Shown here: positions 4,838-29,627 of the stretch, one piece after another
Layout of the letters: the number at the start of each line of letters is the position of its first letter
How positions within the stretch are numbered: the stretch's first letter is position 1
Assembly: GCF_964194025.1 (NCBI RefSeq)
Contig: NC_134471.1
Span: 19,654,001 to 19,718,000 of the forward strand
From: Convolutriloba macropyga
Taxonomy: Eukaryota
Length of the DNA: 64,000 bases
Direction: 5' to 3'
Notes under the pieces: generated by a model
What the model saw: the letters and a program-made list of their open reading frames with translations, nothing else
What the model was told of the DNA's origin: nothing
The model's database searches: none
Translations under genes and position numbers: made by a program

Positions 4838-7800
4838 ATGCAACAAACAGAAGCAGCAGCAGACCTCCAAGAGCTCGTTGACAAACTTCGACTGCAAAAA
4901 GCGGAGCTTGATCGCATGTGTAATGAACTCATAGAACAACAGTTGACACAAGATGGTTTCGACACTGTTGCTGCAGTCTGCACGGAGAAATTGCAAATGG
5001 CTGAGAATCAAACAAAAAATCAGATTGCTTCATGGGTCAAACCATCAAAAGTTCATCTCCCAGACGTTAACAACCAAGCGGAATGAGACGTAAAACGCCA
5101 ATGCAAAATGCAGGTGAAAACGATGAGAGCTAGGATGAGGTGTTCAGTTCTGATGACCATGATGGTGTACCGTCCAAAAACAGTCATTGTGATCTTCAAA
5201 AAGAGAGAGCAAGTGTAGCAAAATACAACACTCAGCAACAGAAACAAAAAGAAAACAGTGAGATACAGGAGCATCGCAGCCTCAGTGAAGATGCGAAACA
5301 GGTTCAGAGTTGCCCAATTTTTGATGTGAATGTCCCAAATCAAGCTTTTGCTACCCTCAATATTTCAAGCGATCAACCATCAGACACTTTATACTGGAAT
5401 TCCGGTACAACACCTGGATTTCAACCTCGAGCAATGCCTGACAATTTCCCTCAACCGTTTGCAAACAATAACTATCCACGTGATCAGCAACAGGTACGTC
5501 CTTTGTTCGCTAGTCAACTGAATCACTCATTCCCAGAGACAAACAAAATGATGAACGCTCCCAACGCAGAGATTAATCGCCACTTAAATTTCATGCCACA
5601 GCAGTTTTCTGAGCAACAGTTCCCACAAGGACCCCACAATTTTGAGTGGACCAATCATCAAGTGATGATGAATGCTTTCAGTCTACCAACGATTAGTTTT
5701 GACCATTTCTCAGGCGATCCTTTGATGTGGCATCAATGGTACAGCTTTTTCAAGTCAACCATTCACGACAATCCAGCTCTTTCAACTGTTCAGAAAATGA
5801 CATACTTGCAAAACTCGGTAACTCACAAAGCAAGACTTCATCTGTGGTTACTCTTACAACGAAGACTTCTATGAGGAGGCACTTCAGGAACTTATCAGAA
5901 AGTTTGGAAAGCCGCAGCATGTTGTGAGTGCGTACCTCACACAACTTGAACAATGGCCTCAGACCAGAATGGATGATCCCAGCAGCTTTGTAAGTTTCGC
6001 ATCCTTCCTCAGACGTTTGGTACAGTTCTTTCGACTCCACCATTTTGAATCGGACCTAAAGGCGTCTGCGGTAGTTAAAGTTGCCAAGGAAAAGTTGACA
6101 ACACCAATGACGATTCTCTGGAATCAACATGTACGGAGCATGAGAATAGAGCAACCCAATTTGGCTGATTTTGCAGATTGGATAAGCACATATGCAGAGG
6201 CTTGCGAGGATGTTTCTCCACAAAGACCACAAAGAACAGGCCGGGTTGAACGGTTTTCCCAAGGCCATAAACACTCCAACATAATTCTTCAAGCCAGCTC
6301 AAATTGTCAACTATGCTCTGGAGATCACAACCTTGGTCGTTGCAAAGAATACCTGAGCAAGTCTGTAGCTGACCGTCAGCAATTGGTGAGGCATCACAAC
6401 TTGTGTGTCAATTGCTTGAAGAGACATGAGAGTGGATTCTGTAAGTCAAAAATTCGATGTCCTGTAGACAGATGCAATGGGTTTCATCATTCAACTCTCC
6501 ATCGAGACGACTTCAGGACTTTGCAGAGAACTGATTTCCAAGCAACGAGTAAAGGGGGATTTCAATCCAGGAACAACCCGGTGCATTCAAACTACGGTAG
6601 AAACTGCAGCCATACAACGTCTCAGCTTTCGTCAACAATCAGTAACACGCCAAATACCAACGACAGAAGGGGATACAAAACAATTTCAACCCTCGTAATC
6701 CAAACTATGGAAACAACAGCTCGCATCAAACTGCCAATCAGCAGCACAGCAATCCTCAGCAATCTAATGACAGAAGTAACACTCACTTTCGATCAGTGAC
6801 CAGCAACAAACTGATTGATGATTCATCAAAACTTCCACGCGTGCAAAACCACACATGCAGTAGAAATGGGGAACCCACATGGATCAGAGCTTTTATTCAA
6901 CTACAGGCAATACCAGTCACGCTCTTCTACAAAGACTGCAACATAGAGACTTATGCACTTTTGGACAGTGGAAGTGATAATACACAGATCACACAAAACA
7001 TTGCTGATGCTCTTCGAATTCGAGTCCCCAAAGATATAGAACTACCTCTAGCTTCGCTACATGGGGAGCACACGGTGACAACAGCTGATGTCATGATCGG
7101 AATTGGTTCACTTCGCAGCTCAAAACCGGTGACAAGTCTTCCTGTGTACGCAACCTCCATCGAGCAGTTCCAGATGCCAACTGTTCCCGCAAAAATGTTG
7201 AATAGACTTTGTAGAGACCATGATCATCTGGCAGAAGTCAATTTCCCTCAAATTCGTGACAACAAATTTGGAATACTCATAGGAGCTGATGCTTTTCTGG
7301 CTACTGTTCCAAGGCACTTCACTACCGGCAAACCAGGAACACCCTACGGAGTCAACACAATGTTAGGATGGACTTTGACAGGCCCTGTGCGACGAGAGTA
7401 CTTTCAACCAAACAATAAAGGAAGCAGCAACCTTCTACATCTGTTTTGGACCTTTGAAGGTGTCAACTTTAGTCAGGGTTCTAAAAAGGGACACAATGAA
7501 GAGGATCAAACGGCACTAAAGACTTTGGCAGAGACCACACTTCACAACGGGGAAAGATACGAGATTGGACTCCCTTGGCGAGAAAACGTCACACTGCCAA
7601 ACAACTACTTCATGGCAAGGGTTCAGTGGCACGGCCTGCAAAAGCGATTAGAAAGAGACAACCAACTGAAACAAAGGTATATGACCACTACCTTTGATGA
7701 TATGGATAAGGGATCCATGACAGCTGTTACGAACCAGGATGCAAAGAACACTTGGTATCTACCGCATCATCCCTTCATCAACAAGCAAAAACCAGACAAG

Positions 7801-10646
7801 ATAAGACGAGTGACAAATGCAGCCTCAAAATACAAAGGGGTTTCTTTGAACGATGCACTGCTAACGGGACCTGACCTTTTGTGCAATCTACATGGACTTC
7901 TTCTACGGTTGCGTCAGTACGAGTTTGCAGTTACAGCAGACATAGAGGCTATGTTCATGCAAGTTGGAATCAGAGAAGAAGACCAAGATGCTCTCCGTTT
8001 TTTGTGGAGCAACAATGATGAGGAGAGGACATCCAAATACCAACGACTCATTTTTGGAGCAACTTGTGCTCCCGCCTGCGCAATTTTTGTTCTGCAAAAG
8101 TGCGCCAACGATAACAGACAAGAACATCCAAAAATATTTGACTCAATCACAAAACAGTTCTACATGGATGACTTCATTCAAACATTTTCAACAGAGGAAG
8201 AGGCAGCAAATACAGCGACTGAGCTGAAACCTGTTCTCAAAACAGGGGGATTCAACCTCACCAAATTTCTCACCAATAACCCTGCTGTGCTGGAAAAGAT
8301 TCCTGAGGAAGACAGAATTGGAGTTCTAAAGTTGCTAAGGATTCTTGGCCAAAGATGGAACCCTGAATCCGATCAACTTCCTTTTGCGAAACCCAAACTG
8401 AGCTATGAAAAAGAGAATATCACACAGAAAGCTTCTCTCAATGGCTGCTTCTTTGTTTGATCCCATTGGGATAATCTCGCCTTTTGCAATTCGACTGAGA
8501 TGCAGCTTGCAAAAAGTCATCAAACAAGGACACAATTGGGACCAGCTGCTATCAAAGGAACGTTATAACGAAATTCAGCAATGGATGGAAGACTTCTAGA
8601 ATATGCCTCCAATTCAAATCCCCCGATGTCTAGTTCCCAACGTCGATGGAACGAGTTGCACACCTTCACAGATGCTTCACTTTCAGCAGTATCAGCAGTG
8701 GTGTACCTGATGGCAATCTCCGCTGACGGCTCAATAGCTACGCGCTACGTCATCAGCAAATCCAAGGTGGCACCAATCAAACAGTTGAGCATTCCCAAGT
8801 TGGAGCTCGAAGCAGCTACATTGGGAGCAGAACTGGCAGGCTTCTGTGAGACCGAGAAACAATAGATGTGAAGAGCAAAAAATTTTTGGACCGACTGCAC
8901 AGCAGTACTCAGCTGGATCAAATCAAAGAATCGACAGAAGATGTACATCGCAAATAGGCTCTACAAAATTGCTGAGAACTCAAACAAAGACGATTGGCGA
9001 CACGCACCAGGAAAAATGAACCCAGCTGATCATGGCACCAGAGGTCTAGCTCCATGCGATCTTCAAAAATTGTGGATAGTGGCACCTTCTTTCTTGATCA
9101 AACCTGAGAGCGAGTGGACATTCTCCGGTGACAAACCAGCTCAAACATACGCCACTCAAGTTGATGACAAGACCAGTGAAAAAACCGTTGGTAGATCCAA
9201 ACAGATTTTCAAACTGGCCTAGACTCTTTGGCACAATTAGGACAGTGTTTGGAGCAGTACGCGTACTGAAGAGGTTGATCAAACGTGACGTACCTTGCGA
9301 CTTGGACGACTTCGAGGCTGACGAAAACAAGGCTCGAACCTTTCTGTTGAGGATATCTCAGTCCACACACTTCAAGGACACAGTTTCTCGACTTCAAAGT
9401 CAACTACCCCTAGACAAGAAGGACAAACTTTTACAATATACACCCTTTCTGGATAGTGACGGACTCCTTAGGGTTGAGGGACGAATTCAGAAATCTGGAT
9501 TGCCGTTTCAGAGCAAACATCCGGTGATACTCCACAGCAAGTGCAGAGTTGCCAAACTGCTTATCTAGAAAGCACATCACGACTGCGGGCATCATGGAAT
9601 TGAACATGTTCGTGCACATATCCAAGCAACGTTCATGATAGTTGGAATCCGCAGAGCTCTAAGAACTTTAGGGAAGTACTGCTTCATCTGCAGACGCTGG
9701 CGAGCAGACAATGTCAGACCCAAGGTGGCTCCTCTACCAAATTTTTGCTTTCCGGAGCACTCCAAACTCTACCCTTTTGTGAATACTGGAATGGACATGT
9801 TCGGTCCTTTTCACATTGAAAAATCCAGAACCCAGACAGAACTCAGTTATGTCTGCATGTTGACATGCTTGGTCACACGAGCAGTACACTTAGAAGTTTG
9901 TGAGGACCTCTCCACTGACTGTCTACTAATGGCTATTCGACGTTTTGTATCCAGACGAGGATACCCTGATGTCATTGTTTCGGACAACGGAAAAAACTTT
10001 GTTGGAGCTAACCAGGCAATGAAACTCAATTTTCAGGAAAACTACAATCCAGACAACAACTACATGTGTCTCCAGCTGGCGCAACAGAACATCCAGTGGA
10101 CGTTCAACCCACCTCTGGCACCGCACTTCGGAGGGGTTTGGGAACGACTTATCCAGTCGGCTAAACGAAGCCTACTTGTTGTCCTCGGAAGCCGCCGACT
10201 AAACTTTTCAGTCTTCCATACAGTCGTAGCTGAGGCAGAAGGAATTCTTAATTCACGCCCACTGACGCATGTTGGGAGCACTTTGATCGACGAGGAACCA
10301 TTAACACCGAATCATTTCCTGATGAGAAGACGCCACTTCTGCCTAAAACCTCTGGCAAACAACAGAACCAGGTTCTCAATTAAAGACTTCAAGGAGTCAG
10401 ACCCTGTTGGACCACTATTGGTCTCGTCTTCTCAAAGAGTTTGTACCGGAACTTAGCAGACGGACAAAATGGCAGCAAGCCAACGCTGAGCTCAAGGAAG
10501 ACGATGTTGTTTGGTTCCACAAAGATTTCACACCTCGAGGAATTTGGCCCATTGGTCGGATCGTCAAAGCACATATGAGTGGCAAGAAGCTTCGACATCA
10601 AGACCAGTACTGGCATAGTGCAATGTCCCGCAGTGAGATTGGGTAA
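4838..10646 (+). pseudogene. Disrupted gag-pol polyprotein of the BEL/Pao element
   Basis: Gag region FSGDPLMWHQWYSFF; zinc knuckles CQLCSGDHNLGRC, CVNCLKRHESGFC and CPVDRCNGFHHSTLH; protease ALLDSGS; RT QFYMDDFI; RNase H LHTFTDAS...IPKLELEAA; integrase MDMFGPF/SDNGKNF/WERLIQSAK. Broken by about 10 frameshifts or stops (e.g. stops at 5086, 8599, 9568). Confidence 0.92.
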
Positions 10647-11453: not shown

Positions 11454-12038
11454 ATGTTTTCTGAAGTTGAAATCAACATTATTCTGGCCGATTTTATGAT
11501 TCACAATCTCAGCTCAGCTGATGAAGAGTCGCAAATTTTAAAACCTTACCGTATAGTAGACGAAAAAGCTCAATTTTCATACGTGGGCAGTATTACATTC
11601 TGTCCGAAACAATCGAAAACTAGTCGCGGGATTCTAAAGAGCCCTCCGAAGAGACAATTGAGCGGCTTAAGTCCAGTCAAAAAGACAAATAACGCTACGA
11701 AGCAGAATAAATTTGCATCACCGCCTACCAAACAAGTTGAAAGCCCAATGCCAAGTTCTGTTGCACCGAAAATTGACGTGAGATCTATGATGTCAGTAAC
11801 TCTAAATATGAGTAATAACGAGAAAAGTTATAAGTGTTCATTTTGTAGTCAGGAAACAGCTTTGTTGACTTCAATGAAGCGCCATATTGAGACGAAACAC
11901 TTGCCTAGTACAGCTTCGTTTGAGTGTCGAAACTGTGAGTACAAAACAAAGCTCAAGTTTATGCTGAAGAAACATTACATGAATAAACATGCAATGCCAG
12001 AACCAGCAGCGCAAGGAATGATGACTTGCTATAACTGA
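11454..12038 (+). CDS. Two-finger C2H2 zinc-finger protein, paralog 1 (194 aa)
   Basis: Intact ORF. Fingers CSFC-x12-HIETKH and CRNC-x12-HYMNKH. Acceptor ttacag at 11441-11446; AATAAA at 12237. Confidence 0.85.
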   Translation: MFSEVEINIILADFMIHNLSSADEESQILKPYRIVDEKAQFSYVGSITFCPKQSKTSRGILKSPPKRQLSGLSPVKKTNNATKQNKFASPPTKQVESPMPSSVAPKIDVRSMMSVTLNMSNNEKSYKCSFCSQETALLTSMKRHIETKHLPSTASFECRNCEYKTKLKFMLKKHYMNKHAMPEPAAQGMMTCYN

Positions 12039-16325: not shown

Positions 16326-16422
16326 CTATTGCGCACTTGTATCTCTGCACATTGCGTTGTACATGTGTTCCGTTTAATGAAATAGCATATAGCGATGTAT
16401 GGATTGAGCTTACAGATTGACT

Positions 16423-17028
16423 ATGAGTACTGTTGCATATGACTTACAGATTCAGTTTCAGCCCTCAATTTTTGATGACTTCCCTCTTGACTGTAAGTTG
16501 AGCTCCTCTTCTGTCTGTAAGGAGTACCAAATTATTGATTATGTTAACTCGATAATCGTAGGTATTATTTCTCTTAATCCAACACTAGTTGCACCTGCTG
16601 ATGAATTCGAAAATTTCAAACAAAATATTAAACATTTTTGTGCACCTACTATTGCAATGAAAGCTCCGATCAAAAGACAAAGTGTGCCGAGAGCTCCTAA
16701 AGCGTTGCAACCACCTTCTAAACAAATTCAATCCATTCCGATGAACCCCAATGCTCCCAAAATTGACGTGACCTCTATGATGTCAATAACTCAAAATATG
16801 AGTACTAACGAGAGAAGTTATAAATGTTCATTTTGCGGACAAGACACGGTTCTGTTGTCTTCTATGAAGCGACATATTGAGACAAAACACTTGCCGAGTA
16901 CAGCCTCTTTTGCGTGTCAGAATTGTGATTACACGACTAAGTTGAGATACGTATTAAAGAATCATTACATTGGAAAACATGGAATGCCAGAATTAGCTGC
17001 TCGAGGCATGATGGCTTATTACAGTTGA
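16423..17028 (+). CDS. Two-finger C2H2 zinc-finger protein, paralog 2 (201 aa)
   Basis: Intact ORF from ATG 16423. Fingers CSFC...HIETKH and CQNC...HYIGKH. Acceptor ttacag ends at 16415. Confidence 0.85.
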   Translation: MSTVAYDLQIQFQPSIFDDFPLDCKLSSSSVCKEYQIIDYVNSIIVGIISLNPTLVAPADEFENFKQNIKHFCAPTIAMKAPIKRQSVPRAPKALQPPSKQIQSIPMNPNAPKIDVTSMMSITQNMSTNERSYKCSFCGQDTVLLSSMKRHIETKHLPSTASFACQNCDYTTKLRYVLKNHYIGKHGMPELAARGMMAYYS

Positions 17029-19317: not shown

Positions 19318-19431
19318 AAATAATGTTACCAGACGCCGGTGTCCATGCTATGAAAATGGAGTATACCAAGTAACGTTAGAAACGTCGCTTACGTTTTCTC
19401 ACGTTAAATTAGATTAAGCTTGTAGGTGAAA

Positions 19432-20025
19432 ATGTTCAATGCATACGAGTTTCAACTCCAAATGTTATCTGATTTTGTTAACGACTTGTCTTCAACCAAT
19501 GACCTGGCCTCTGAATCTAGGCAGTATACAATTCTTGATCATCAAACAGAGGTCATCGGAAAAATTTCTATAACCCCGAAACAAATAGAAACAAATACTA
19601 ATGCTTTTGAGAATTTCAAACCAAATTTGAAGCGTTCTATCGGTCAAGCTGTCGCTCAGCCTCCTGTCAAAAAACAAAGTGCTCCGAAAGTTCCGAAAGT
19701 CTCACAACAACCAACGAAGCCAGTTCAAGCTATGCCGGTAAATTCAAATGCTCCGAAAATTGACGTGACCTCAATGATGTCAGTAACCCAAAACATGAGC
19801 ACTCAGGAGAAAAGCTACAGATGCTCATTTTGCGGATCAGAAAGCTCCCATTTGACATCGATGAAGCGCCACATTGAGACGAAACACTTGCCTAGTACAA
19901 CTTCATTTGACTGTCGAAACTGTGAGTACAAAACAAAACTCAAGTTTATGCTGAAGAGACATTACATGAATAAACATGCAATGCCAGAACCAGCAGCGCA
20001 AGGAATGATGACTTGCTATAACTGA
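19432..20025 (+). CDS. Two-finger C2H2 zinc-finger protein, paralog 3 (197 aa)
   Basis: Intact ORF from ATG 19432. Fingers CSFC...HIETKH and CRNC...HYMNKH. Acceptor ttgtag ends at 19425. Confidence 0.85.
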   Translation: MFNAYEFQLQMLSDFVNDLSSTNDLASESRQYTILDHQTEVIGKISITPKQIETNTNAFENFKPNLKRSIGQAVAQPPVKKQSAPKVPKVSQQPTKPVQAMPVNSNAPKIDVTSMMSVTQNMSTQEKSYRCSFCGSESSHLTSMKRHIETKHLPSTTSFDCRNCEYKTKLKFMLKRHYMNKHAMPEPAAQGMMTCYN

Positions 20026-24260: not shown

Positions 24261-24621
24261 ATAATTGCAATGCCGAACGTTAAATCATAATTCACTTGCA
24301 CAATGCGTGGTTTAAATTGGTGAAGCCAATATGGATAGTCATTTAAATTTTTGGCTAATATCGCGAAATGGTACGCTGTTCCTGGTTATTATGCGAGTGC
24401 AGCTTCATAATTTCAGCGTCTTCTAAATACTGTTTTTTTAAACTTATGAACAAGGGTAGCAATATTTGGTGGTAGTTCTGCAAGCTATCAAAGTTAAAAT
24501 ACGTTATTAGTGGACAACTGAAGTATTTGGTGGAAACTATAAGAATTCTCAGAAAAGGACATTTGAGAGCATTTTGGGACATTGTTGAGGACACGGTTTT
24601 TACCAACCATACAAAGTTGGC

Positions 24622-24949
24622 GGTGTCAGGACAATTTACCCAATTCCATTTTACCCAACCTGCCATTTTACCCAATGTCAACTTACCCAATTTACCCTAT
24701 TGCTAAATTAACCAGAACAACTATTTAGCCGACTATAAAATAAATGGCCCGTGGGACTTGATATGAAACTATCACAACCGAACTTGGGATTGGATTATAT
24801 TGTCCACAAATATTTAAAATCATCCGTGTAATAGCGACTGCTAATTTGTAATCGGATAATTGAACGAAAAGATCAAAGAGCATTGGGTAAGTTGGTGTTG
24901 GATAAAATGGCGTAGAGTAAAATGGCATTGGGTGAATTGTCATGTAACC
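24622..24949. mobile_element. Mutator-like MITE (328 bp)
   Basis: Perfect 9-bp TSD aaagttggc at 24613-24621 and 24950-24958. TIRs ggtgtcaggacaatttaccc / gggtgaattgtcatgtaacc. Subterminal ttacccaa repeats mirrored at both ends. Confidence 0.85.
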
Positions 24950-25051
24950 AAAGTTGGCTGCCATTGATTTTCTGTGCCGATGCTAAGTTGTTCAAAATTG
25001 TCCTATGGAAAATAAAAATTTCAGATGTAATTTAACGGCTGTTCTCCCAAA

Positions 25052-27425
25052 ATGTTGATGGAACAAGTGTACAAAACCAACGCAAACACAGAATTAATTC
25101 TGAAATGTCACGAACAGTTCGCAGTTCAGATCGGAATCTCAGCGTCTGTATTCCAAGTCTCCATTAAACTTTGGCGGGCTGTTTTTGACCTGAACCCGGA
25201 GCTAGACTTGGAGGCAACTCAATGGTTTGCCGCTATTGTGTTGATATCAGCATTGAATTCGCGTATCAGTTCAGAATCGCGGTTACAAGTAAATGTCACA
25301 ACGCTACTTCGTAAAAGCAACATGTCTGTGTTGTCGTTAATGAATAAATTGAAGTACTTAAGAGAAATTGTTTACCTGAGCCAACGATCAATTGACGGTA
25401 TTTTGGACTTTCAAAGAAAGTTTTGCGTCTCGGCAGCAATTTTTGATCGGTTTTGTAAAATTTACGGCGATATTTTTGCAATTGATGTCGAGCGGTCAAA
25501 TGAGGAATTGGACCAAAATTATGTCTTCGATATACCGGAACCAAAACAGGCCTGTTGGTTAATATATTTACTAGCCAAAGATGAAATGCCTATTGCCCAT
25601 ACTCAAATTTTTCTATCTTTTCAAGTACTATTATGCGCTATTGATTTCGTCATGCGAGGCACACAAAAGTTTTTGCTTTTGAATGAATTCTCGATGGCTT
25701 TAGAAAACGAATCTCAAACTGTGGAAGCATTCTCAGAGCTTACTCCAGTTTTGAAACTTTTATGTAATAAATACGGCTGTGACGCTTCAGAAATGGTACA
25801 TGTCAAAAAGAAGCTGGACTCTACTTTTTTTGTTTCGTTTCTGAAAAAGTCAATTTCTGATAAAACTTTATCCAGTTCGTTAGCAGGGGATATTTTTCTC
25901 CCAAACTCGAATGAATTACATGGTCGGTACTGGGAAATATTGGATCGATATTTCGAACTCGACGAAACTTTGTTTTTAGCTCAAGATCCAATCATTGCGT
26001 TGCAAAATAGTTCTCAGCCATCGACAAAAAGCGCATCCAAGAAATCGGAAAACTCGTTAGAAAGTGATCACCCAAAACCCCTTGATGAAAACCCCGTAAT
26101 TGAACAAAATTCAAGTTCTAGTAATGAATTGAATTCAAATTTACGCTCTGAAATTGATCAGCTTTTAGCTAATTTGGACTTGACTCTAACGGAGATTCTG
26201 TCCAACTTTTTCACTAATTCAGAGAAATTATGCGATTCAAATGTAGATGATTTGAAAGAGAATTGCAAAAAGTTGATGTTTGAGGTTGTAGAAGCAATTA
26301 ATAAAAAACAGCCGTCGGAAACCGCCTCAGAAATTGAAGATAATTTTTCGGTTGATAACTTAGATTGTTTGTATGCGATTTGCGTAATTTCTTGTTTAGT
26401 TAATACGTTCCCTTTACCAGTTGCACAAAATTCCGAAAGTCAAATTGACGATGTTAAAGCATTGACTGTTCTTGAATCGTTACGAATATCGTTGCCTCTT
26501 TTAGTAAAGAAAATTGACATTATCGAAGAATATGTTGAAATTTTCTCAACATTGCAATTGTCTAGACTCAAATGTATCGAAGAACGCTGTATCGAGTTTC
26601 ACGTTTTTAAAGATAGCTCATTTATTAAATTATTCATGCAGCAAAAAACGCTGAGTAAGTCGACTGCTTATGAGTTGGAAAATGGCCGAAAGGTTTACTT
26701 GGCCGAATTGGCGATTTTTTCTAACAAAATCTGCAGATTAGCGTACAGAAGATTGCAGCAGTTATGCAAGTTGCTAAATATTGTCTCAGAACTAGAAGCC
26801 AAAATTTGGGAGTGCTTTGAGCATTGCTTATTCGAACGGACATTCCTATTTGAAAACCGCCACTTAGATCAAATTGTCATGTGCTCGATTTACGCAATTT
26901 GCAAAGTGTCTGATAATGAAAGAAAGTTCAAAAATATCACCCAAGCGTACAGAAAAATACCAAACACTGCAGCTGAAGTTTTCAAAAAAGTGAAAATCTT
27001 TGAAGAAAGCAATTCGTATGACTCGATTATAGCATTTTACAATAAGGTTTTCATGCAGACGTTGAAAAACTTCATTCTTCAGTACTCGACAATCGGAAAT
27101 TCAGAAGCTAACAACCCCGAACAACAACCAACAGTCACAAATGTCTTGAAACGAGTAAATCCAAATGTATTGATTCGCAACGCGCTCAACAAGCCAGCAG
27201 TCCACCAACCACCCGCAATCTCAACTTGCAGTGGAAAGGGTAGCCAGATAACTGGGGTCAGTCCGAAGTTCTGGCCAACTGCACCTGGTGGATTGCCCTC
27301 GGATGAACAGTTGCCATTACGTCATATGGCTTCAGCAATAGTGGCGAATAAAGAATACCAGCAGTCGAATCGGAAGAACAAATATACCAGTCGAGAAACG
27401 AAAGTTATTGGGTTTCAGTCAACAG
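25052..27425 (+). CDS. RB1: Retinoblastoma-family pocket protein (RB1-like), large coding exon 1
   Basis: RbN motifs (CWLIYLLAK, LSFQVLLCAIDF, FELDETLFL). Pocket B closely matches RB1 (RLAYRRL, RHLDQIVMCSIYAICKV, YDSIIAFYNKVFMQTLK). Phase-1 donor g|gttggt at 27426. Confidence 0.9.
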
Positions 27426-27989
27426 GTTGGTTTTTCTGTATTTTTGTGGACGGGTTGTTTTGAGTTGCTTTTGTAAAAATTAGAGAAGACCACTGTGGTA
27501 AAGTAAGATGATGAGTGGTGTCTGATTCCCCTATCAAAATTTTAGTTTTAATTTACATGGTTTTTGCGCGGTTTTTTGCACCAATGCGCACTTTTTTTGT
27601 AATAATGCGCGCTTTTTGCACTGATGGTTGGTAGTATAGTGTAACCTAATAACATGTGGACTGACTGTTTCAAAAATGCGACCAAGGAACTTAATGCCCG
27701 GGGAAAAAATATCACTTCGCGTTTCTTTTCGCATTCGAAAAATACTTGCAATGTGTAAAGTTTTTAAGGAGTTACTTAGCCTTTGAAGTTAGTTTAGTCT
27801 CCGACAACACAAGCCTTGAAAGATGAACTGTGCAAAAGACCTTTAGTATTAGGGCGATTTAAGTTATGTTATCAAAATGAAACAATCGCATTTATATATA
27901 CCACGAGGAAACTTCCAACAAACTATAATGTAGTAACAACTTTAAGGAGCAAAGGTATTCAAAGTTTTAAAAAGCTAAGCACGCTTTTT

Positions 27990-28880
27990 TCATGCTATGA
28001 ATTACGCTGATAATTCATTCAAATCCCCACTATGTCGAACAGGTGTCCCAATGACCTGCTATATTGTTTTTGTCAGAGTGTTTATAATGCTTGCGATAAG
28101 TCAATACCTCATTTAACAAAACGCCGGCTTGAGGTACCATTTTACATGTCTTCCCATAGTGTACACATGGAAAACAAGTTGAAGACGCTAAGGAAAGCAA
28201 ACAAAGACCAGAGAAAATTAGAAATTCACACGTGGAGTTGAATTTATCGTTGTTTAAGGACTAACAAAATTTTATCGAGGGTTTACGTATTTGCACAAAC
28301 AACGATGCATACAAATTTTTGCGCAAACTAAAGCAAGCACAAATTTTCCCCAAAGAAAATGAAACGTAGCGGTCTAGATATAAAAGGTTCTCAACAAATT
28401 GCGGAGTGTTTCAACGAGCATTTCTCGTAAGTTTTTGTCGAAGATAATTCTGACATTGTTGTGCCTGAAACAGCCAAAACAGATACTTCTCTAGACGATA
28501 TCACTTTCAACGCAAAAGAACTGCTAGAAGAAATATCACATTTTAAATCTGACGCGAAGTCATGGTCAGATAACACCATCACTCCTTAAAGCCTCAGCGC
28601 CGTACGTCATAAACGGTATCTTATATATATTTAGCTGCATTATTAACGCTTGCCATTTTCCCAATGTCTTGAAAAACGTACACGTGCGTCCTCATCACAA
28701 AAATGGTAGCAGAATGGAAATTAAAAATTACAGACTAATTGCAATGCTCTGTGCAATTTCTATGGTTTTCGAAAGAATAGTTTACAAACAAATTAAGAAG
28801 ACAGTCGAAAGAAAGCTTTGCACTGAGCAACATGGTTTTCGGCAAAAGCATTCAACAGTTTATTTGAAAATTACTTGAAA
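27990..28880 (+). mobile_element. Decayed LINE ORF2 fragment in the RB intron
   Basis: RT N-terminal motifs VRPHHKNG..KNYRLIAML..FERIV..EQHGFRQKHST; multiple stops upstream. Confidence 0.75.
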
Positions 28881-29385
28881 ATGTTTAATGTTGTCCGATT
28901 TGTTCCTTCTAACCGGCTTTCAAATTTTATTGTTTTTGATTTTTTCCAATACGTTTCGGCTGTTAGTTTATGTTGGTTGTTACTTTGCTTTTAGTGTTTG
29001 AACATGTTAGTGCTCATTATAGCCAAATTTTGCTTGAATTGTTTAAGTTGCCAACATTTTTGTCTGAAATTGAACTCGCTAATTTTCTATTTGACTTATA
29101 GACACAGACACAAAATGTTCAAGTTGATACCGTATGCGTTGGCTGTCTCTTAACAAAAAACTTTTCTGACATAATTCTATTGTTTTCCAAGAATATCAGA
29201 CATTAATAGATTTTTTCGGCTGTCGTGCGTGCCTAAGTTTACCGATACTTCAACGAATTTGTATAGATGGAGAACCATTGGCTTTCGTCGCTATAGCACG
29301 TATCTAGAAGTAAAACTTATATATTTGTTTTTCACCATAATTTCACGCGTCTCTCAAAAGTGCTAAATTTGTCGAGGTGTTTTAG

Positions 29386-29627
29386 ATGGTCGACCTCATC
29401 AAAAAACAGGTGGAAGCACAAGTGCAATTGACAGTGATCAGCCGCAAGGCAAGGTCAGAATTTTGCAAGCACCCTCGTCTTTAACCACGCGTATGAACAA
29501 ATCATCTGCCGCTCGAGGGAGAGATTCGTCCGAGTCAAGCGAAGATGAAGAAGAGGCCAGAGCCAATCAAGACATTTACAATCGCATTTTGAACAGTGGA
29601 CTCAAATACGTTCACAAGCCGAAGTGA
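29386..29627 (+). CDS. RB1: Probable terminal coding exon of the RB-like gene
   Basis: Acceptor ttttag. In phase 1 with the 27426 donor, it reads open for about 80 codons (DGRPHQK...SSESSEDEEE...YVHKPK*) and is GC-richer than the intron. Confidence 0.65.

What the first reader, a model, noticed from the sequence alone, without database searches (positions are those of the whole stretch)
25052..29627. Atypical retinoblastoma protein: intact LxCxE cleft, degenerate pocket A, almost no CDK sites
Seen: pocket B is highly RB1-like, including residues equivalent to the LxCxE cleft (SIYAICKV and FYN, compare Y709, K713, Y756, N757). Pocket A aligns only weakly: YYK/RxxE becomes MFEVVE, FYKVIE becomes LVKKID, FPW is lost and the AW motif becomes VF. 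The pocket-B motif FYKK becomes FSNK. The spacer is only ~20 aa. The ~870-aa product has just two S/T-P motifs (ELTP, VSPK), and the conserved TPV (T373-like) before pocket A reads NPV. Established: E2F transactivation domains bind the A-B groove, and CDKs inactivate RB through many S/T-P sites. Inference: a CDK-uncoupled, possibly E2F-independent chromatin adaptor, either a specialised paralog or a sign of rewired G1/S control.
Basis: partly seen in the sequence, partly recalled or inferred. Interest (0 to 1): 0.75.

Follow-up and report, generated by a model that had tools for sequence, protein, structure and literature searches.

The report
Acoel RB1 without CDK sites
This is the acoel worm's version of the retinoblastoma tumour-suppressor gene RB1: a real, selected gene that keeps the groove for LxCxE partner proteins but has lost every conserved CDK phosphorylation site and most residues that normally hold the E2F activation domain, so it may show what RB does apart from E2F and CDKs.

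Summary
Window 25052-27425 plus 29410-29627 encodes an 863-aa pocket protein of the acoel Convolutriloba macropyga.

- **Domains:** Pfam finds RB_B (1e-33) and the RbN domain. It finds no RB_A and no Rb_C.
- **Pocket A:** it still folds (AlphaFold2, hhalign 95%) but shares only 12-15% identity with other RB proteins. It evolves four to seven times faster than pocket B within acoels.
- **LxCxE cleft:** 10 of 10 positions checked are identical to the family consensus.
- **E2F groove:** the A-side contacts E464, R467, I536, K537 and K548 are lost. The K530 position reads K/C/E/E across acoels and is K/N polymorphic in this species.
- **CDK sites:** none of 12 conserved RB1 S/T-P sites remains. 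The canonical C-terminal domain is unrecognisable.
- **Orthology:** it is not an extra paralogue. A tree places it inside RB1, and the only other pocket gene is p107/p130-type with a canonical pocket A.
- **Clade-wide:** Symsagittifera and two unnamed relatives show the same features in unbroken reading frames.
- **Selection:** synonymous sites are saturated, and within-species pN/pS is 0.12.
- **Context:** acoel E2F keeps a canonical pocket-binding tail. The p107/p130-type gene has also lost most conserved CDK sites.

No RNA data and no binding test were available. I class it as a new variant of a known kind; its function is inferred.

The parts
25052..27425 (+). Exon 1 of the RB1-type pocket-protein gene: codons 1-791 plus the first base of codon 792
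   Evidence: ORF. The start and N-terminus are conserved with orthologues. The ORF tail after 27425 (GWFFCIFVDGLF) is not conserved, and a GT donor sits at 27426.
25079..25981 (+). RbN domain (aa 10-310), strongly conserved among acoels
   Evidence: Pfam DUF3452 6.4e-17. AF2 pLDDT is mostly >90. Foldseek vs 2qdj gives TMt 0.81. Identity among acoels is 61-73%. pN is 0.16.
25982..26110 (+). N-to-A linker (aa 311-353), disordered. It has NPV where other RB1s have the T373-type TPV site
   Evidence: pLDDT <50 for aa 320-349. The conserved T-P column (21 of 23 RB1s) is not kept. pN is 0.48.
26111..26647 (+). Pocket A (aa 354-532): the fold is kept, the sequence is degenerate and evolves fast
   Evidence: No Pfam RB_A. 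AF2 shows helices with pLDDT about 88-93. Foldseek vs 1gux_A gives TMt 0.67 at 14% identity. hhalign vs canonical A domains gives 95.3% probability at 12% identity. Identity among the more distant acoel pairs is 23-33%, against 69-79% for B.
26507..26509 (+). Codon 486 (Lys), equivalent to human K530. It is K/N polymorphic in the reads
   Evidence: Alignment mapping. SNP 26509 G>C changes AAG to AAC, K>N. K530A abolishes E2F-TAD binding in human RB (PMC1762320).
26648..26698 (+). Very short A-B spacer (aa 533-549) without the S608/S612-type sites
26699..27091 (+). Pocket B (aa 550-680) with an intact LxCxE cleft: Y614, K618, F626, I660, Y663, N664, M668, K672
   Evidence: Pfam RB_B 116.7 bits. 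48% identity and TMt 0.86 to 1gux_B. 10 of 10 cleft positions are identical. pN is 0.11. Five polymorphisms, all synonymous.
27092..27425 (+). First part of an acoel-specific C-terminal region. Conserved motifs are NVLKRVNPNVL.RN.L.KP and PLR..ASAIVA. It has no canonical RbC
   Evidence: Invariant columns. hhalign vs canonical RbC gives 0.2% probability. No Pfam Rb_C, unlike other RB1s.
27426..29409 (+). Putative 1984-nt GT..AG intron, phase 1, absent from the three orthologues
   Evidence: Sequence. Orthologue ORFs are continuous. Only DNA reads cover it, so no splice evidence exists.
28018..28860 (.). Fragment of a high-copy repeat inside the intron, overlapping a reverse-transcriptase remnant
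   Evidence: At least 40 genomic copies at 84-87% identity over query positions 593-1435; the flanking intron sequence is single-copy. RVT_1 3.9e-4 for 28669-28875.
29410..29627 (+). Exon 2: the last 72 codons, with the conserved acidic tail SSESSEDEEEARANQDIYNRI, and the stop codon
   Evidence: Open frame and in-frame junction. The tail is nearly identical to the Symsagittifera orthologue, where it is contiguous with the rest of the ORF.

Best explanation
Shown. The locus is the RB1-type retinoblastoma orthologue of the acoel Convolutriloba macropyga. It is an intact gene with one intron, under purifying selection. The same architecture occurs in Symsagittifera roscoffensis and in two further unnamed relatives that cluster with them. 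It keeps a well-conserved RbN domain, a pocket B whose LxCxE cleft matches the family consensus, and a pocket A that still folds against B. It has lost all conserved S/T-P (CDK) sites, the long regulatory spacer and the recognisable RbC domain. It has also lost most basic and hydrophobic A-domain residues that hold the E2F transactivation domain in human RB. Pocket A keeps drifting within acoels.

Inferred. The protein probably no longer works as a CDK-switched clamp on the E2F activation domain. Pocket A would mainly scaffold pocket B. The protein would act as a constitutive adaptor, regulated some other way (abundance, or the CK2-like acidic serine tail). It would use the LxCxE cleft and RbN to bring chromatin or other partners together. 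Masking of the still-canonical acoel E2F tail would fall to the p107/p130-type paralogue, whose pocket A is canonical. That paralogue has also lost most conserved CDK sites, so the change looks like a lineage-wide loosening of CDK control over pocket proteins, not the specialisation of one gene copy.
For: Identity and orthology:
- Pfam RB_B and DUF3452.
- Best PDB hit is human RB at 3e-39, against p107 at 2.6e-26.
- In the tree the acoel clade (support 100) lies inside the RB1 side of the RB1/RBL split (support 100), on a stem of 1.45 substitutions per site.
- The upstream zinc-finger neighbour is shared with Symsagittifera.
- The genome was identified from assembly length and a 98% match to a named C. 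macropyga protein (PMC13650328).

Only two pocket genes were found: this one and a gene on C8 with at least 11 exons, which scores 376 bits with an RBL profile against 231 with an RB1 profile. The C8 gene has canonical A-domain motifs.

Selection:
- pS is saturated at 0.74-0.9.
- pN against Symsagittifera is 0.11 (B), 0.16 (N), 0.30 (C) and 0.42 (A).
- Within the species there are 16 synonymous and 7 non-synonymous SNPs, pN/pS 0.12.

Pocket A:
- No RB_A hit in the three acoel proteins, against 41 of 44 sampled pocket proteins with one.
- The fold is kept.
- The A/B identity ratio is 0.33 for acoel x RB1 pairs, against a median of 0.84 for normal RB1 pairs.

E2F groove:
- E464, R467, F482, I536, K537 and K548 are replaced.
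- The K530 position is K/C/E/E among acoels and K/N polymorphic here.
- The contact list comes from PMC2898629; the K530A effect from PMC1762320.

LxCxE cleft: 10 of 10 positions identical.

CDK sites: 0 of 12 conserved columns kept. Counts are at or below chance.

RbC: hhalign 0.2% probability, and no Pfam Rb_C.

Context: the acoel E2F tail is canonical and conserved in four species. The RBL gene keeps only 2 of 8 assessable conserved S/T-P columns.
Against: - No RNA run was available, so expression, the splice and the exact acceptor are unverified.
- No binding evidence of any kind exists; the complex prediction gave no verdict.
- Part of the groove is kept: E554, D at the E533 position, K653, R656, and K at the K530 position in this species. 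An invariant RLK..E.R..E.H helix lines it. An altered mode of E2F binding is therefore possible.
- The contact mapping rests on 12-15% identity alignments. Two methods agree on helices alpha8 and alpha9, but they differ by one position around R467.
- The RBL gene model is approximate, built from exon fragments only, so its loss of CDK sites is provisional.
- A cyclin D-like exon exists in the genome (weak), so the upstream kinase module may well be present.
Confidence: 0.5

Rival explanations
1. Still an E2F repressor, with a remodelled interface. The acoel RB1 still binds E2F, either through a co-evolved A-B groove or through its new conserved C-terminal motifs contacting E2F-DP. Cell-cycle control would come from something other than S/T-P phosphorylation: transcription, degradation, or the CK2-type acidic serine cluster.
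For: - E554, D489 (the E533 position), K559 (K653) and R562 (R656) are kept in all four acoels, and an invariant RLK..E.R..E.H helix lines the groove.
- Pocket A is still under some constraint, with dN/dS about 0.18.
- The C-terminal region has strongly conserved acoel-specific motifs.
- The acoel E2F keeps a canonical tail that needs a partner.
Against: - The E2F tail has not changed, so co-evolution is not visible. A canonical partner, the RBL gene, exists.
- The basic residues that complement the acidic tail (R467, K537, K548) are gone in all four proteins. The K530 position varies between species and within this species.
- Pocket A is only 23-33% identical among the more distant acoel pairs, which fits poorly with a conserved peptide-binding surface.
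Confidence: 0.3
2. Ordinary fast evolution with no change of function. Acoels are long-branch animals, and the odd features are neutral drift in a protein that works as usual. CDK control would be exerted through non-consensus or few sites, such as the conserved T231-P.
For: - The stem branch is long, 1.45 substitutions per site.
- The RBL gene and other acoel genes are also divergent.
- One T-P (TPVLK) is conserved in all four acoel proteins.
Against: - The divergence is domain-specific, not general. B and RbN are very well conserved (B is 47% identical to other RB1s, 69-79% among the more distant acoel pairs), while A, RbC and all 12 CDK columns are lost.
- Observed over expected S/T-P is about 0.5, against about 2 in other pocket proteins.
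- T231 lies at a helix start inside RbN and is not a known CDK-site column.
Confidence: 0.12
3. Incomplete gene model or decaying gene. Unseen exons would supply the missing parts, or the 2-kb insertion near the 3' end has truncated a gene that is on its way out in this species.
For: - There is no RNA evidence.
- The insertion interrupts an ORF that is continuous in the relatives, and it carries transposon debris.
- Read depth over 27392-29591 is only about 0.55-0.6 of exon depth.
Against: - The orthologues are complete single ORFs of 834-860 aa. One is in the same 90% cluster and has the same length as a RefSeq protein model.
- Both N- and C-termini align end to end.
- The boundaries are in-frame GT..AG, and the exon 2 tail is almost identical to Symsagittifera.
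- pN/pS is 0.12 within the species.
Confidence: 0.05

Closest known systems
Human/vertebrate RB1 (pRb) and invertebrate 'retinoblastoma-associated protein-like' RB1 orthologues (amphioxus, echinoderms, hemichordate, molluscs)
   Same: - Same clade in the tree.
- Same order of RbN, A, B and a C-terminal tail.
- Pocket B is 46-56% identical.
- The LxCxE cleft is identical at 10 of 10 positions.
- The RB1-type residues N, K, R stand at positions 652, 653, 656, and there is no RBL-type insert in B.
- The predicted pocket superposes on 1N4M and 3POM with TMt 0.75-0.77.
   Different: - No Pfam RB_A or Rb_C.
- Pocket A is only 12-15% identical.
- The A-side E2F contacts E464, R467, I536, K537 and K548 are replaced.
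- 0 of 12 conserved CDK sites remain.
- The spacer is about 17-20 aa.
- There is no RbC core and no conserved KxLKF docking motif.
- New conserved C-terminal motifs are present.
- The coding region is almost intronless.
Drosophila Rbf2-like pocket proteins. P0110, P0130 and P0146 are named only 'retinoblastoma family protein' or 'hypothetical'; calling them Rbf2 rests on my knowledge of its size and paralogy.
   Same: They are the only other pocket proteins in the top 150 hits with S/T-P counts at chance level: 2-3 sites in about 790-815 aa. So a pocket protein with few CDK sites has a precedent.
   Different: - They belong to the p107/p130 (RBL) side of the tree and are a lineage-specific extra copy.
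- They keep a strong RB_A domain of 114-122 bits.
- The acoel protein is the RB1 orthologue itself and has a degenerate pocket A.
Engineered human RB separation-of-function mutants (K530A, E2F-pocket-dead; N757F, LxCxE-cleft-dead; PMC1762320)
   Same: The acoel protein resembles a natural mutant of the E2F-groove class: the A-side groove is altered and the LxCxE cleft is intact.
   Different: It is natural, clade-wide and multi-residue, and it is combined with loss of the CDK sites and RbC. In this species the K530-equivalent residue is still Lys on the reference allele.
p107/p130-type paralogue of the same genome (G000:C8:11329047-11380629, minus strand)
   Same: It is a pocket protein with the LxCxE-cleft residues. 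It has also lost several conserved S/T-P columns.
   Different: It has many exons. Its A-domain motifs are canonical: R at position 467, FPW, Y-R-I-I-E, V-I-K-H-L and AW. It is therefore the likelier holder of the E2F tail.

Membership tests
Pocket-protein family, RB1 subfamily (membership by descent) | Groups with RB1 orthologues, not with p107/p130, in a phylogeny | tested here: met
   the RB1/RBL split has support 100, and the acoel clade (support 100) lies inside the RB1 side. RB 3e-39 against p107 2.6e-26. Caveats: long stem branch, and the tree used the quick LG+G4 method.
Pocket-protein family, RB1 subfamily | RbN domain (Pfam DUF3452) | tested here: met
   61.9 bits against a cut-off of 26.3. 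TMt 0.81 to 2qdj.
Pocket-protein family, RB1 subfamily | Pocket B (Pfam RB_B) with the LxCxE-cleft residues Y709, K713, Y756, N757 | tested here: met
   116.7 bits; 10 of 10 cleft positions identical in all four acoel proteins.
Pocket-protein family, RB1 subfamily | Pocket A recognisable by sequence (Pfam RB_A above threshold) | tested here: not met
   no hit at E<=1. RB_A in 41 of 44 proteins, missing only in three acoel proteins; a weak hit in the fourth (P0004).
Pocket-protein family, RB1 subfamily | Pocket A present as a cyclin-fold domain packed against B | tested here: met
   helices over aa 354-531 with pLDDT about 88-93; the whole pocket gives TMt 0.73-0.77 to RB pockets, and A alone gives 0.67; hhalign 95.3%. 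This rests on a predicted structure only.
Pocket-protein family, RB1 subfamily | Conserved E2F-transactivation-domain contacts in the A-B groove (E464, R467, K530, E533, K537, K548, E554, K653, R656) | tested here: not met
   E464, R467, K537 and K548 are replaced in all four proteins. K530 is K/C/E/E. Kept are E554, K653, R656 and D for E533. K486N polymorphism at the K530 position.
Pocket-protein family, RB1 subfamily | Clusters of S/T-P CDK sites in the linker, spacer and C-terminus | tested here: not met
   0 of 12 conserved columns kept; 2 sites against 4.4 expected by chance and 13-25 in typical members.
Pocket-protein family, RB1 subfamily | RbC domain (Pfam Rb_C; the core that binds the E2F-DP marked box; a cyclin-docking KxLKF motif) | tested here: not met
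   no Rb_C in the acoel proteins; hhalign 0.2% probability against canonical RbC.
Pocket-protein family, RB1 subfamily | Physical binding of E2F and of LxCxE proteins; phosphorylation by cyclin-CDKs | not testable with these tools
   One search gave no verdict. There are no RNA or proteomic data.
Drosophila Rbf2-type CDK-site-poor pocket proteins | Membership of the p107/p130 (RBL) clade as a lineage-specific duplicate | tested here: not met
   the Drosophila proteins lie on the RBL side and the acoel protein on the RB1 side. The resemblance (few S/T-P sites) is convergent.

The most novel reading that the evidence does not exclude
Acoels have uncoupled both of their pocket proteins from CDK phosphorylation. 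Their RB1 orthologue has become a natural separation-of-function RB: it no longer clamps the E2F activation domain and works only through the LxCxE cleft, RbN and a new C-terminal module. The canonical cyclin-CDK -> RB -| E2F switch at G1/S would then be replaced in this early-branching, highly regenerative bilaterian lineage.
Probability: 0.3. Interest if true: 0.8.

Novelty: new variant of a known kind. Interest (0 to 1): 0.55.

Why it matters
What RB does apart from E2F, and apart from CDK control, has mostly been studied with engineered mouse and human mutants. Here a whole animal clade appears to carry such a protein naturally. The LxCxE cleft and RbN are under strong constraint. The E2F-groove side of pocket A, the CDK sites and RbC have been let go.

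If binding assays confirm this, three things follow:
- Acoels would offer a natural system for the non-canonical functions of RB. Related acoels are used for regeneration and stem-cell work, though I checked no paper on this.
- It would show that the cyclin-CDK-RB-E2F switch is not fixed across bilaterians.
- It would show which parts of RB are indispensable over long evolutionary time.

If the protein still binds E2F, it becomes a useful case of a remodelled interface. Either way the gene models are already in public annotation as 'retinoblastoma-associated protein-like'. A full-text search found no paper dealing with an acoel RB.

Tried and rejected
- **Complex prediction** of the pocket (aa 350-690) with the 50-residue C-terminus of the acoel E2F: score 0.01, 'no answer'. 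It counts neither for nor against binding.
- **RNA evidence**: only four DNA runs from one study hold the locus. No expression or splice data could be obtained.
- **Retrogene idea.** The nearly intronless RB1 beside a many-exon RBL suggested an old retrocopy. I downgraded this because the E2F genes are also single ORFs and earlier notes list many intronless genes in this genome.
- **Transposon-made intron with target-site duplication.** Both intron ends share ACAGGT, but only the middle 845 nt is repetitive and the flanks are single-copy. A simple TE-insertion origin is not supported.
- **Presence/absence polymorphism of the intron.** Half depth over 27392-29591 could equally be a second haplotype more than 5% divergent and filtered out. 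Unresolved.
- **dN/dS per domain.** Synonymous sites are saturated in every pair, so only pN and approximate ratios are usable.
I replaced it with 36 rows under LG+G4.
- **Absence of cyclin D.** A Cyclin_N scan found 11 loci, and one exon is weakly D-like. Absence is not supported, and CDK4/6 was not searched.
- **Full RBL protein.** The protein-search length rules did not let me retrieve one, so the RBL analysis uses exon fragments.

Full report
**What is there.** The window is G000:C4:19654001-19718000 of a 1,175.98-Mb assembly. That size matches the published Convolutriloba macropyga genome (PMC13650328). An E2F encoded elsewhere in the genome is 98% identical to a protein named C. macropyga. 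The finding sits on one long ORF, 25052..27463(+), 803 aa. Pfam finds RB_B (1.1e-33, aa 553-672) and the RbN domain DUF3452 (6.4e-17), but no RB_A even at E<=1. The best solved relatives are human RB (4elj, 3e-39, aligned over aa 166-680), then p107 (2.6e-26).

**Gene model.**
- Three orthologues exist as unbroken single ORFs of 860, 834 and about 808 aa, at 60, 50 and 48% identity.
- The 860-aa one shares a 90% cluster with a RefSeq protein of the same length, 'retinoblastoma-associated protein-like [Symsagittifera roscoffensis]'.
- In these orthologues the acidic C-terminal motif SSESSEDE.EAR.N..IY is contiguous with the rest.
- In the window that motif lies at 29410-29627, behind 1984 nt bounded by cag|gttggt and acag|gtgg. 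Joining 27425 to 29410 is in frame and gives 863 aa.
- The non-conserved tail of the first ORF and the near-identity of exon 2 with Symsagittifera argue that the intron is spliced.
- A second in-frame acceptor, 60 nt downstream, cannot be excluded.
- Only the middle 845 nt of the intron is a high-copy repeat with a reverse-transcriptase remnant; its flanks are single-copy.
- Only DNA runs hold the locus, so expression and splicing are unverified.

**Orthologue, not extra paralogue.**
- A search of 1.84 billion representatives gives the acoel proteins and then a large gap: 606 bits, then 213 bits.
- The next hits are RB1 orthologues of a hemichordate, echinoderms, amphioxus, a nemertean and a priapulid.
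- In a 36-protein tree, RB1 and p107/p130 (RBL) split with support 100. The acoel clade (support 100) lies within RB1 on a stem of 1.45 substitutions per site.
- The genome has only one other pocket locus, on C8. It spans about 51 kb with at least 11 exons and scores 376 bits with an RBL profile against 231 with an RB1 profile.
- A small C2H2 zinc-finger gene lies just upstream of RB in both C. macropyga and Symsagittifera (42% identity, 6e-55). The locus is therefore positionally orthologous.

**A real, constrained gene.**
- Synonymous sites are saturated in all pairs (pS 0.74-0.9), while pN is far lower.
- Against Symsagittifera, pN is 0.11 in B, 0.16 in RbN, 0.30 in the C-region, 0.42 in A and 0.48-0.62 in the linkers.
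- The DNA runs show 23 SNPs in exon 1: 16 synonymous and 7 non-synonymous, pN/pS 0.12. All five SNPs in B are synonymous.

**Pocket A.**
- Of 44 aligned pocket proteins, 41 carry Pfam RB_A. The three that do not are acoel. The fourth acoel protein has only a weak hit.
- The domain is not gone. AlphaFold2 (mean pLDDT 77, pTM 0.75) predicts helices over aa 354-531 at pLDDT about 88-93.
- The whole pocket superposes on RB pockets with TMt 0.73-0.77. A alone gives TMt 0.67 at 14% identity. B alone gives TMt 0.86 at 48% identity.
- A profile of the four acoel A domains aligns to canonical A domains with 95.3% probability at 12% identity.
- A is 23-33% identical among the more distant acoel pairs, against 69-79% for B and 61-73% for RbN. 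Even the closest pair (P0003/P0004) is 63% in A against 95% in B.
- The A/B identity ratio is 0.33 for acoel-versus-RB1 pairs, against a median of 0.84 (range 0.55-1.29) for ordinary RB1 pairs.
- Relaxation of A is thus specific and ongoing. It is not a side effect of a generally long branch.

**E2F groove and LxCxE cleft.** I used the published contact list for 1N4M (PMC2898629) and the finding that K530A alone abolishes E2F-TAD binding while N757F abolishes LxCxE binding (PMC1762320). I mapped these residues through two independent alignments, which agree on helices alpha8 and alpha9. Residues are given in the order P0001/P0002/P0003/P0004.

| Human position | State in the four acoel proteins |
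|---|---|
| E464 | Q/S/S/T |
| R467 | E/G/N/Y |
| F482 | L/L/K/K |
| K530 | K/C/E/E |
| I536 | E/E/S/S |
| K537 | E/A/N/N |
| K548 | S/S/T/A |
| E533 | D in all four |
| E554, K653, R656 | kept in all four |
| K652 | N in all four, also the commonest state in the sampled non-acoel RB1s (13 of 23) |

- The K530-equivalent codon (26507-26509) is itself K/N polymorphic in the reads.
- All ten LxCxE-cleft positions examined are identical to the family consensus in all four acoel proteins.

**CDK sites and C-terminus.**
- The spliced protein has two S/T-P motifs, against 4.4 expected from composition. The orthologues have 3-5.
- Typical pocket proteins have 13-25, about twice their expectation.
- Twelve alignment columns carry S/T-P in at least 12 of 23 non-acoel RB1s. 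By my memory of human numbering they include the equivalents of T373, S608, S780 and T826. The window's protein keeps none of the twelve.
- The spacer is about 17-20 aa.
- The C-terminal region has no Pfam Rb_C and no detectable profile similarity to canonical RbC (hhalign 0.2%).
- It lacks the MTPRSR..LYSFGE core and the KRLKF-type docking motif seen in the other RB1s. It has its own invariant motifs instead.
- The only other pocket proteins with chance-level S/T-P in the top 150 are Drosophila proteins that I take to be Rbf2-like. They lie on the RBL side of the tree and keep RB_A at 114-122 bits.

**Context in the same genome.**
- Two near-identical single-ORF E2F genes on C6 end in TDYRLALDDSETLFDLYC. 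This matches the pocket-binding motif of the human E2F1 activation domain position by position; that comparison rests on my knowledge of the E2F1 sequence. The motif is conserved in the E2Fs of three other acoel-like sources.
- A pocket protein with a working groove is therefore expected. The RBL gene has the canonical A motifs: an R at position 467, FPW, Y-R-I-I-E, V-I-K-H-L and AW.
- In a provisional model built from exon fragments, the RBL gene keeps only 2 of the 8 conserved RBL S/T-P columns that could be assessed. For example, SPRR has become AARR and ISP has become LMP.
- Cyclin E-, A-, B- and C-like genes are present by my reading of the motifs. One exon is weakly cyclin-D-like.

**Interpretation.**
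- Shown: this is an RB1 orthologue under purifying selection. RbN and B with its LxCxE cleft are conserved. The A side of the E2F groove, all canonical CDK sites, the long spacer and RbC have been lost or remodelled. These features are shared by Convolutriloba, Symsagittifera and two unnamed relatives.
- Inferred, about 50%: the protein is no longer a CDK-switched clamp on the E2F activation domain. It acts as a constitutive adaptor through the LxCxE cleft and RbN, with pocket A serving as a scaffold for B. The RBL paralogue handles the E2F tail. CDK control of pocket proteins is loosened lineage-wide.
- Main rival, about 30%: a remodelled but still functional E2F interface with a different regulatory input.
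- Minor rivals: plain drift without functional change (about 12%), and a wrong or decaying gene model (about 5%).

**Limits.** There is no RNA, no binding data, and the complex prediction gave no verdict. The contact mapping rests on low-identity alignments and a predicted structure. The RBL model is fragmentary. Two of the four orthologues are unnamed metagenome contigs. The half depth across 27392-29591 is unexplained.

**Verdict.** This is a new variant of a known kind, of moderate to high interest.

Noticed in passing
window 26507-26509 (SNP at 26509): The Lys codon equivalent to human RB K530, whose K530A mutation abolishes E2F-TAD binding, is K/N polymorphic in the DNA runs. Two further non-synonymous SNPs (L401F, C508Y) also fall in pocket A. 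All five SNPs in pocket B are synonymous.
   Followed up: partly
window 27392-29591: Contig depth over the putative intron and the start of exon 2 is only about 0.55-0.6 of the depth of exon 1, in all four runs. Either the second haplotype is more than 5% divergent here and was filtered out, or the insertion is heterozygous.
   Followed up: partly
window 11454-12038, 16417-17028, 19426-20025 (+): Three tandem copies of a roughly 200-aa C2H2 zinc-finger gene lie upstream of RB. A single orthologue (42% identity) lies just upstream of RB in Symsagittifera (L010:4810-5400). The neighbourhood is conserved and the gene is triplicated here.
   Followed up: partly
window 24497-24890: A very high-copy repeat lies roughly 160-550 nt upstream of the start codon. 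Summed contig depth reaches about 300,000, against about 65 for the gene, and the contig joints are messy.
   Followed up: no
window 25019-25051: A tttcag acceptor-like site lies 27 nt upstream of the ATG, followed by a two-codon ATG-TAA mini-ORF. It could be a spliced-leader or 5'-UTR acceptor, as earlier notes propose for other genes of this genome.
   Followed up: no
window 5140-10456 (+): A GC-richer stretch (0.42-0.45) holds retrotransposon ORFs: DUF1759 gag-like, RVT_1 and an integrase core.
   Followed up: partly
G000:C8:11367049-11368415 and 11375084-11376421 (L016-L018): The p107/p130-type gene contains a roughly 8-kb internal tandem duplication that repeats two coding exons almost exactly. 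This could be a real duplication or an assembly artefact.
   Followed up: no
L024 and L025 (G000:C6:36.66 Mb and 36.27 Mb): Two near-identical (~98%) single-ORF E2F genes lie about 390 kb apart. Both end in a canonical pocket-binding activation-domain motif. A third E2F-like single ORF of 752 aa (L022) has no obvious such motif.
   Followed up: partly
L021/L023 (G000:C3844) and L035 (G000:C1556): Small contigs carry a two-DNA-binding-domain E2F7/DEL-like ORF and a cyclin. L035 has 54% GC. They look unlike the host genome and may come from the Tetraselmis symbiont, not the worm.
   Followed up: no
L042 (G000:C11:56803496-56803678): An exon encodes ...YQLLGATCLFIATKYD. Its best matches are viral D-type cyclins and human cyclin D1 (E 1e-4 to 3e-4), so it is a possible cyclin D gene.
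   Followed up: partly
L011:3992-4867: In one unnamed relative, a complete ribosomal protein L5 (uL18) ORF without introns lies about 1.1 kb upstream of the RB orthologue.
   Followed up: no
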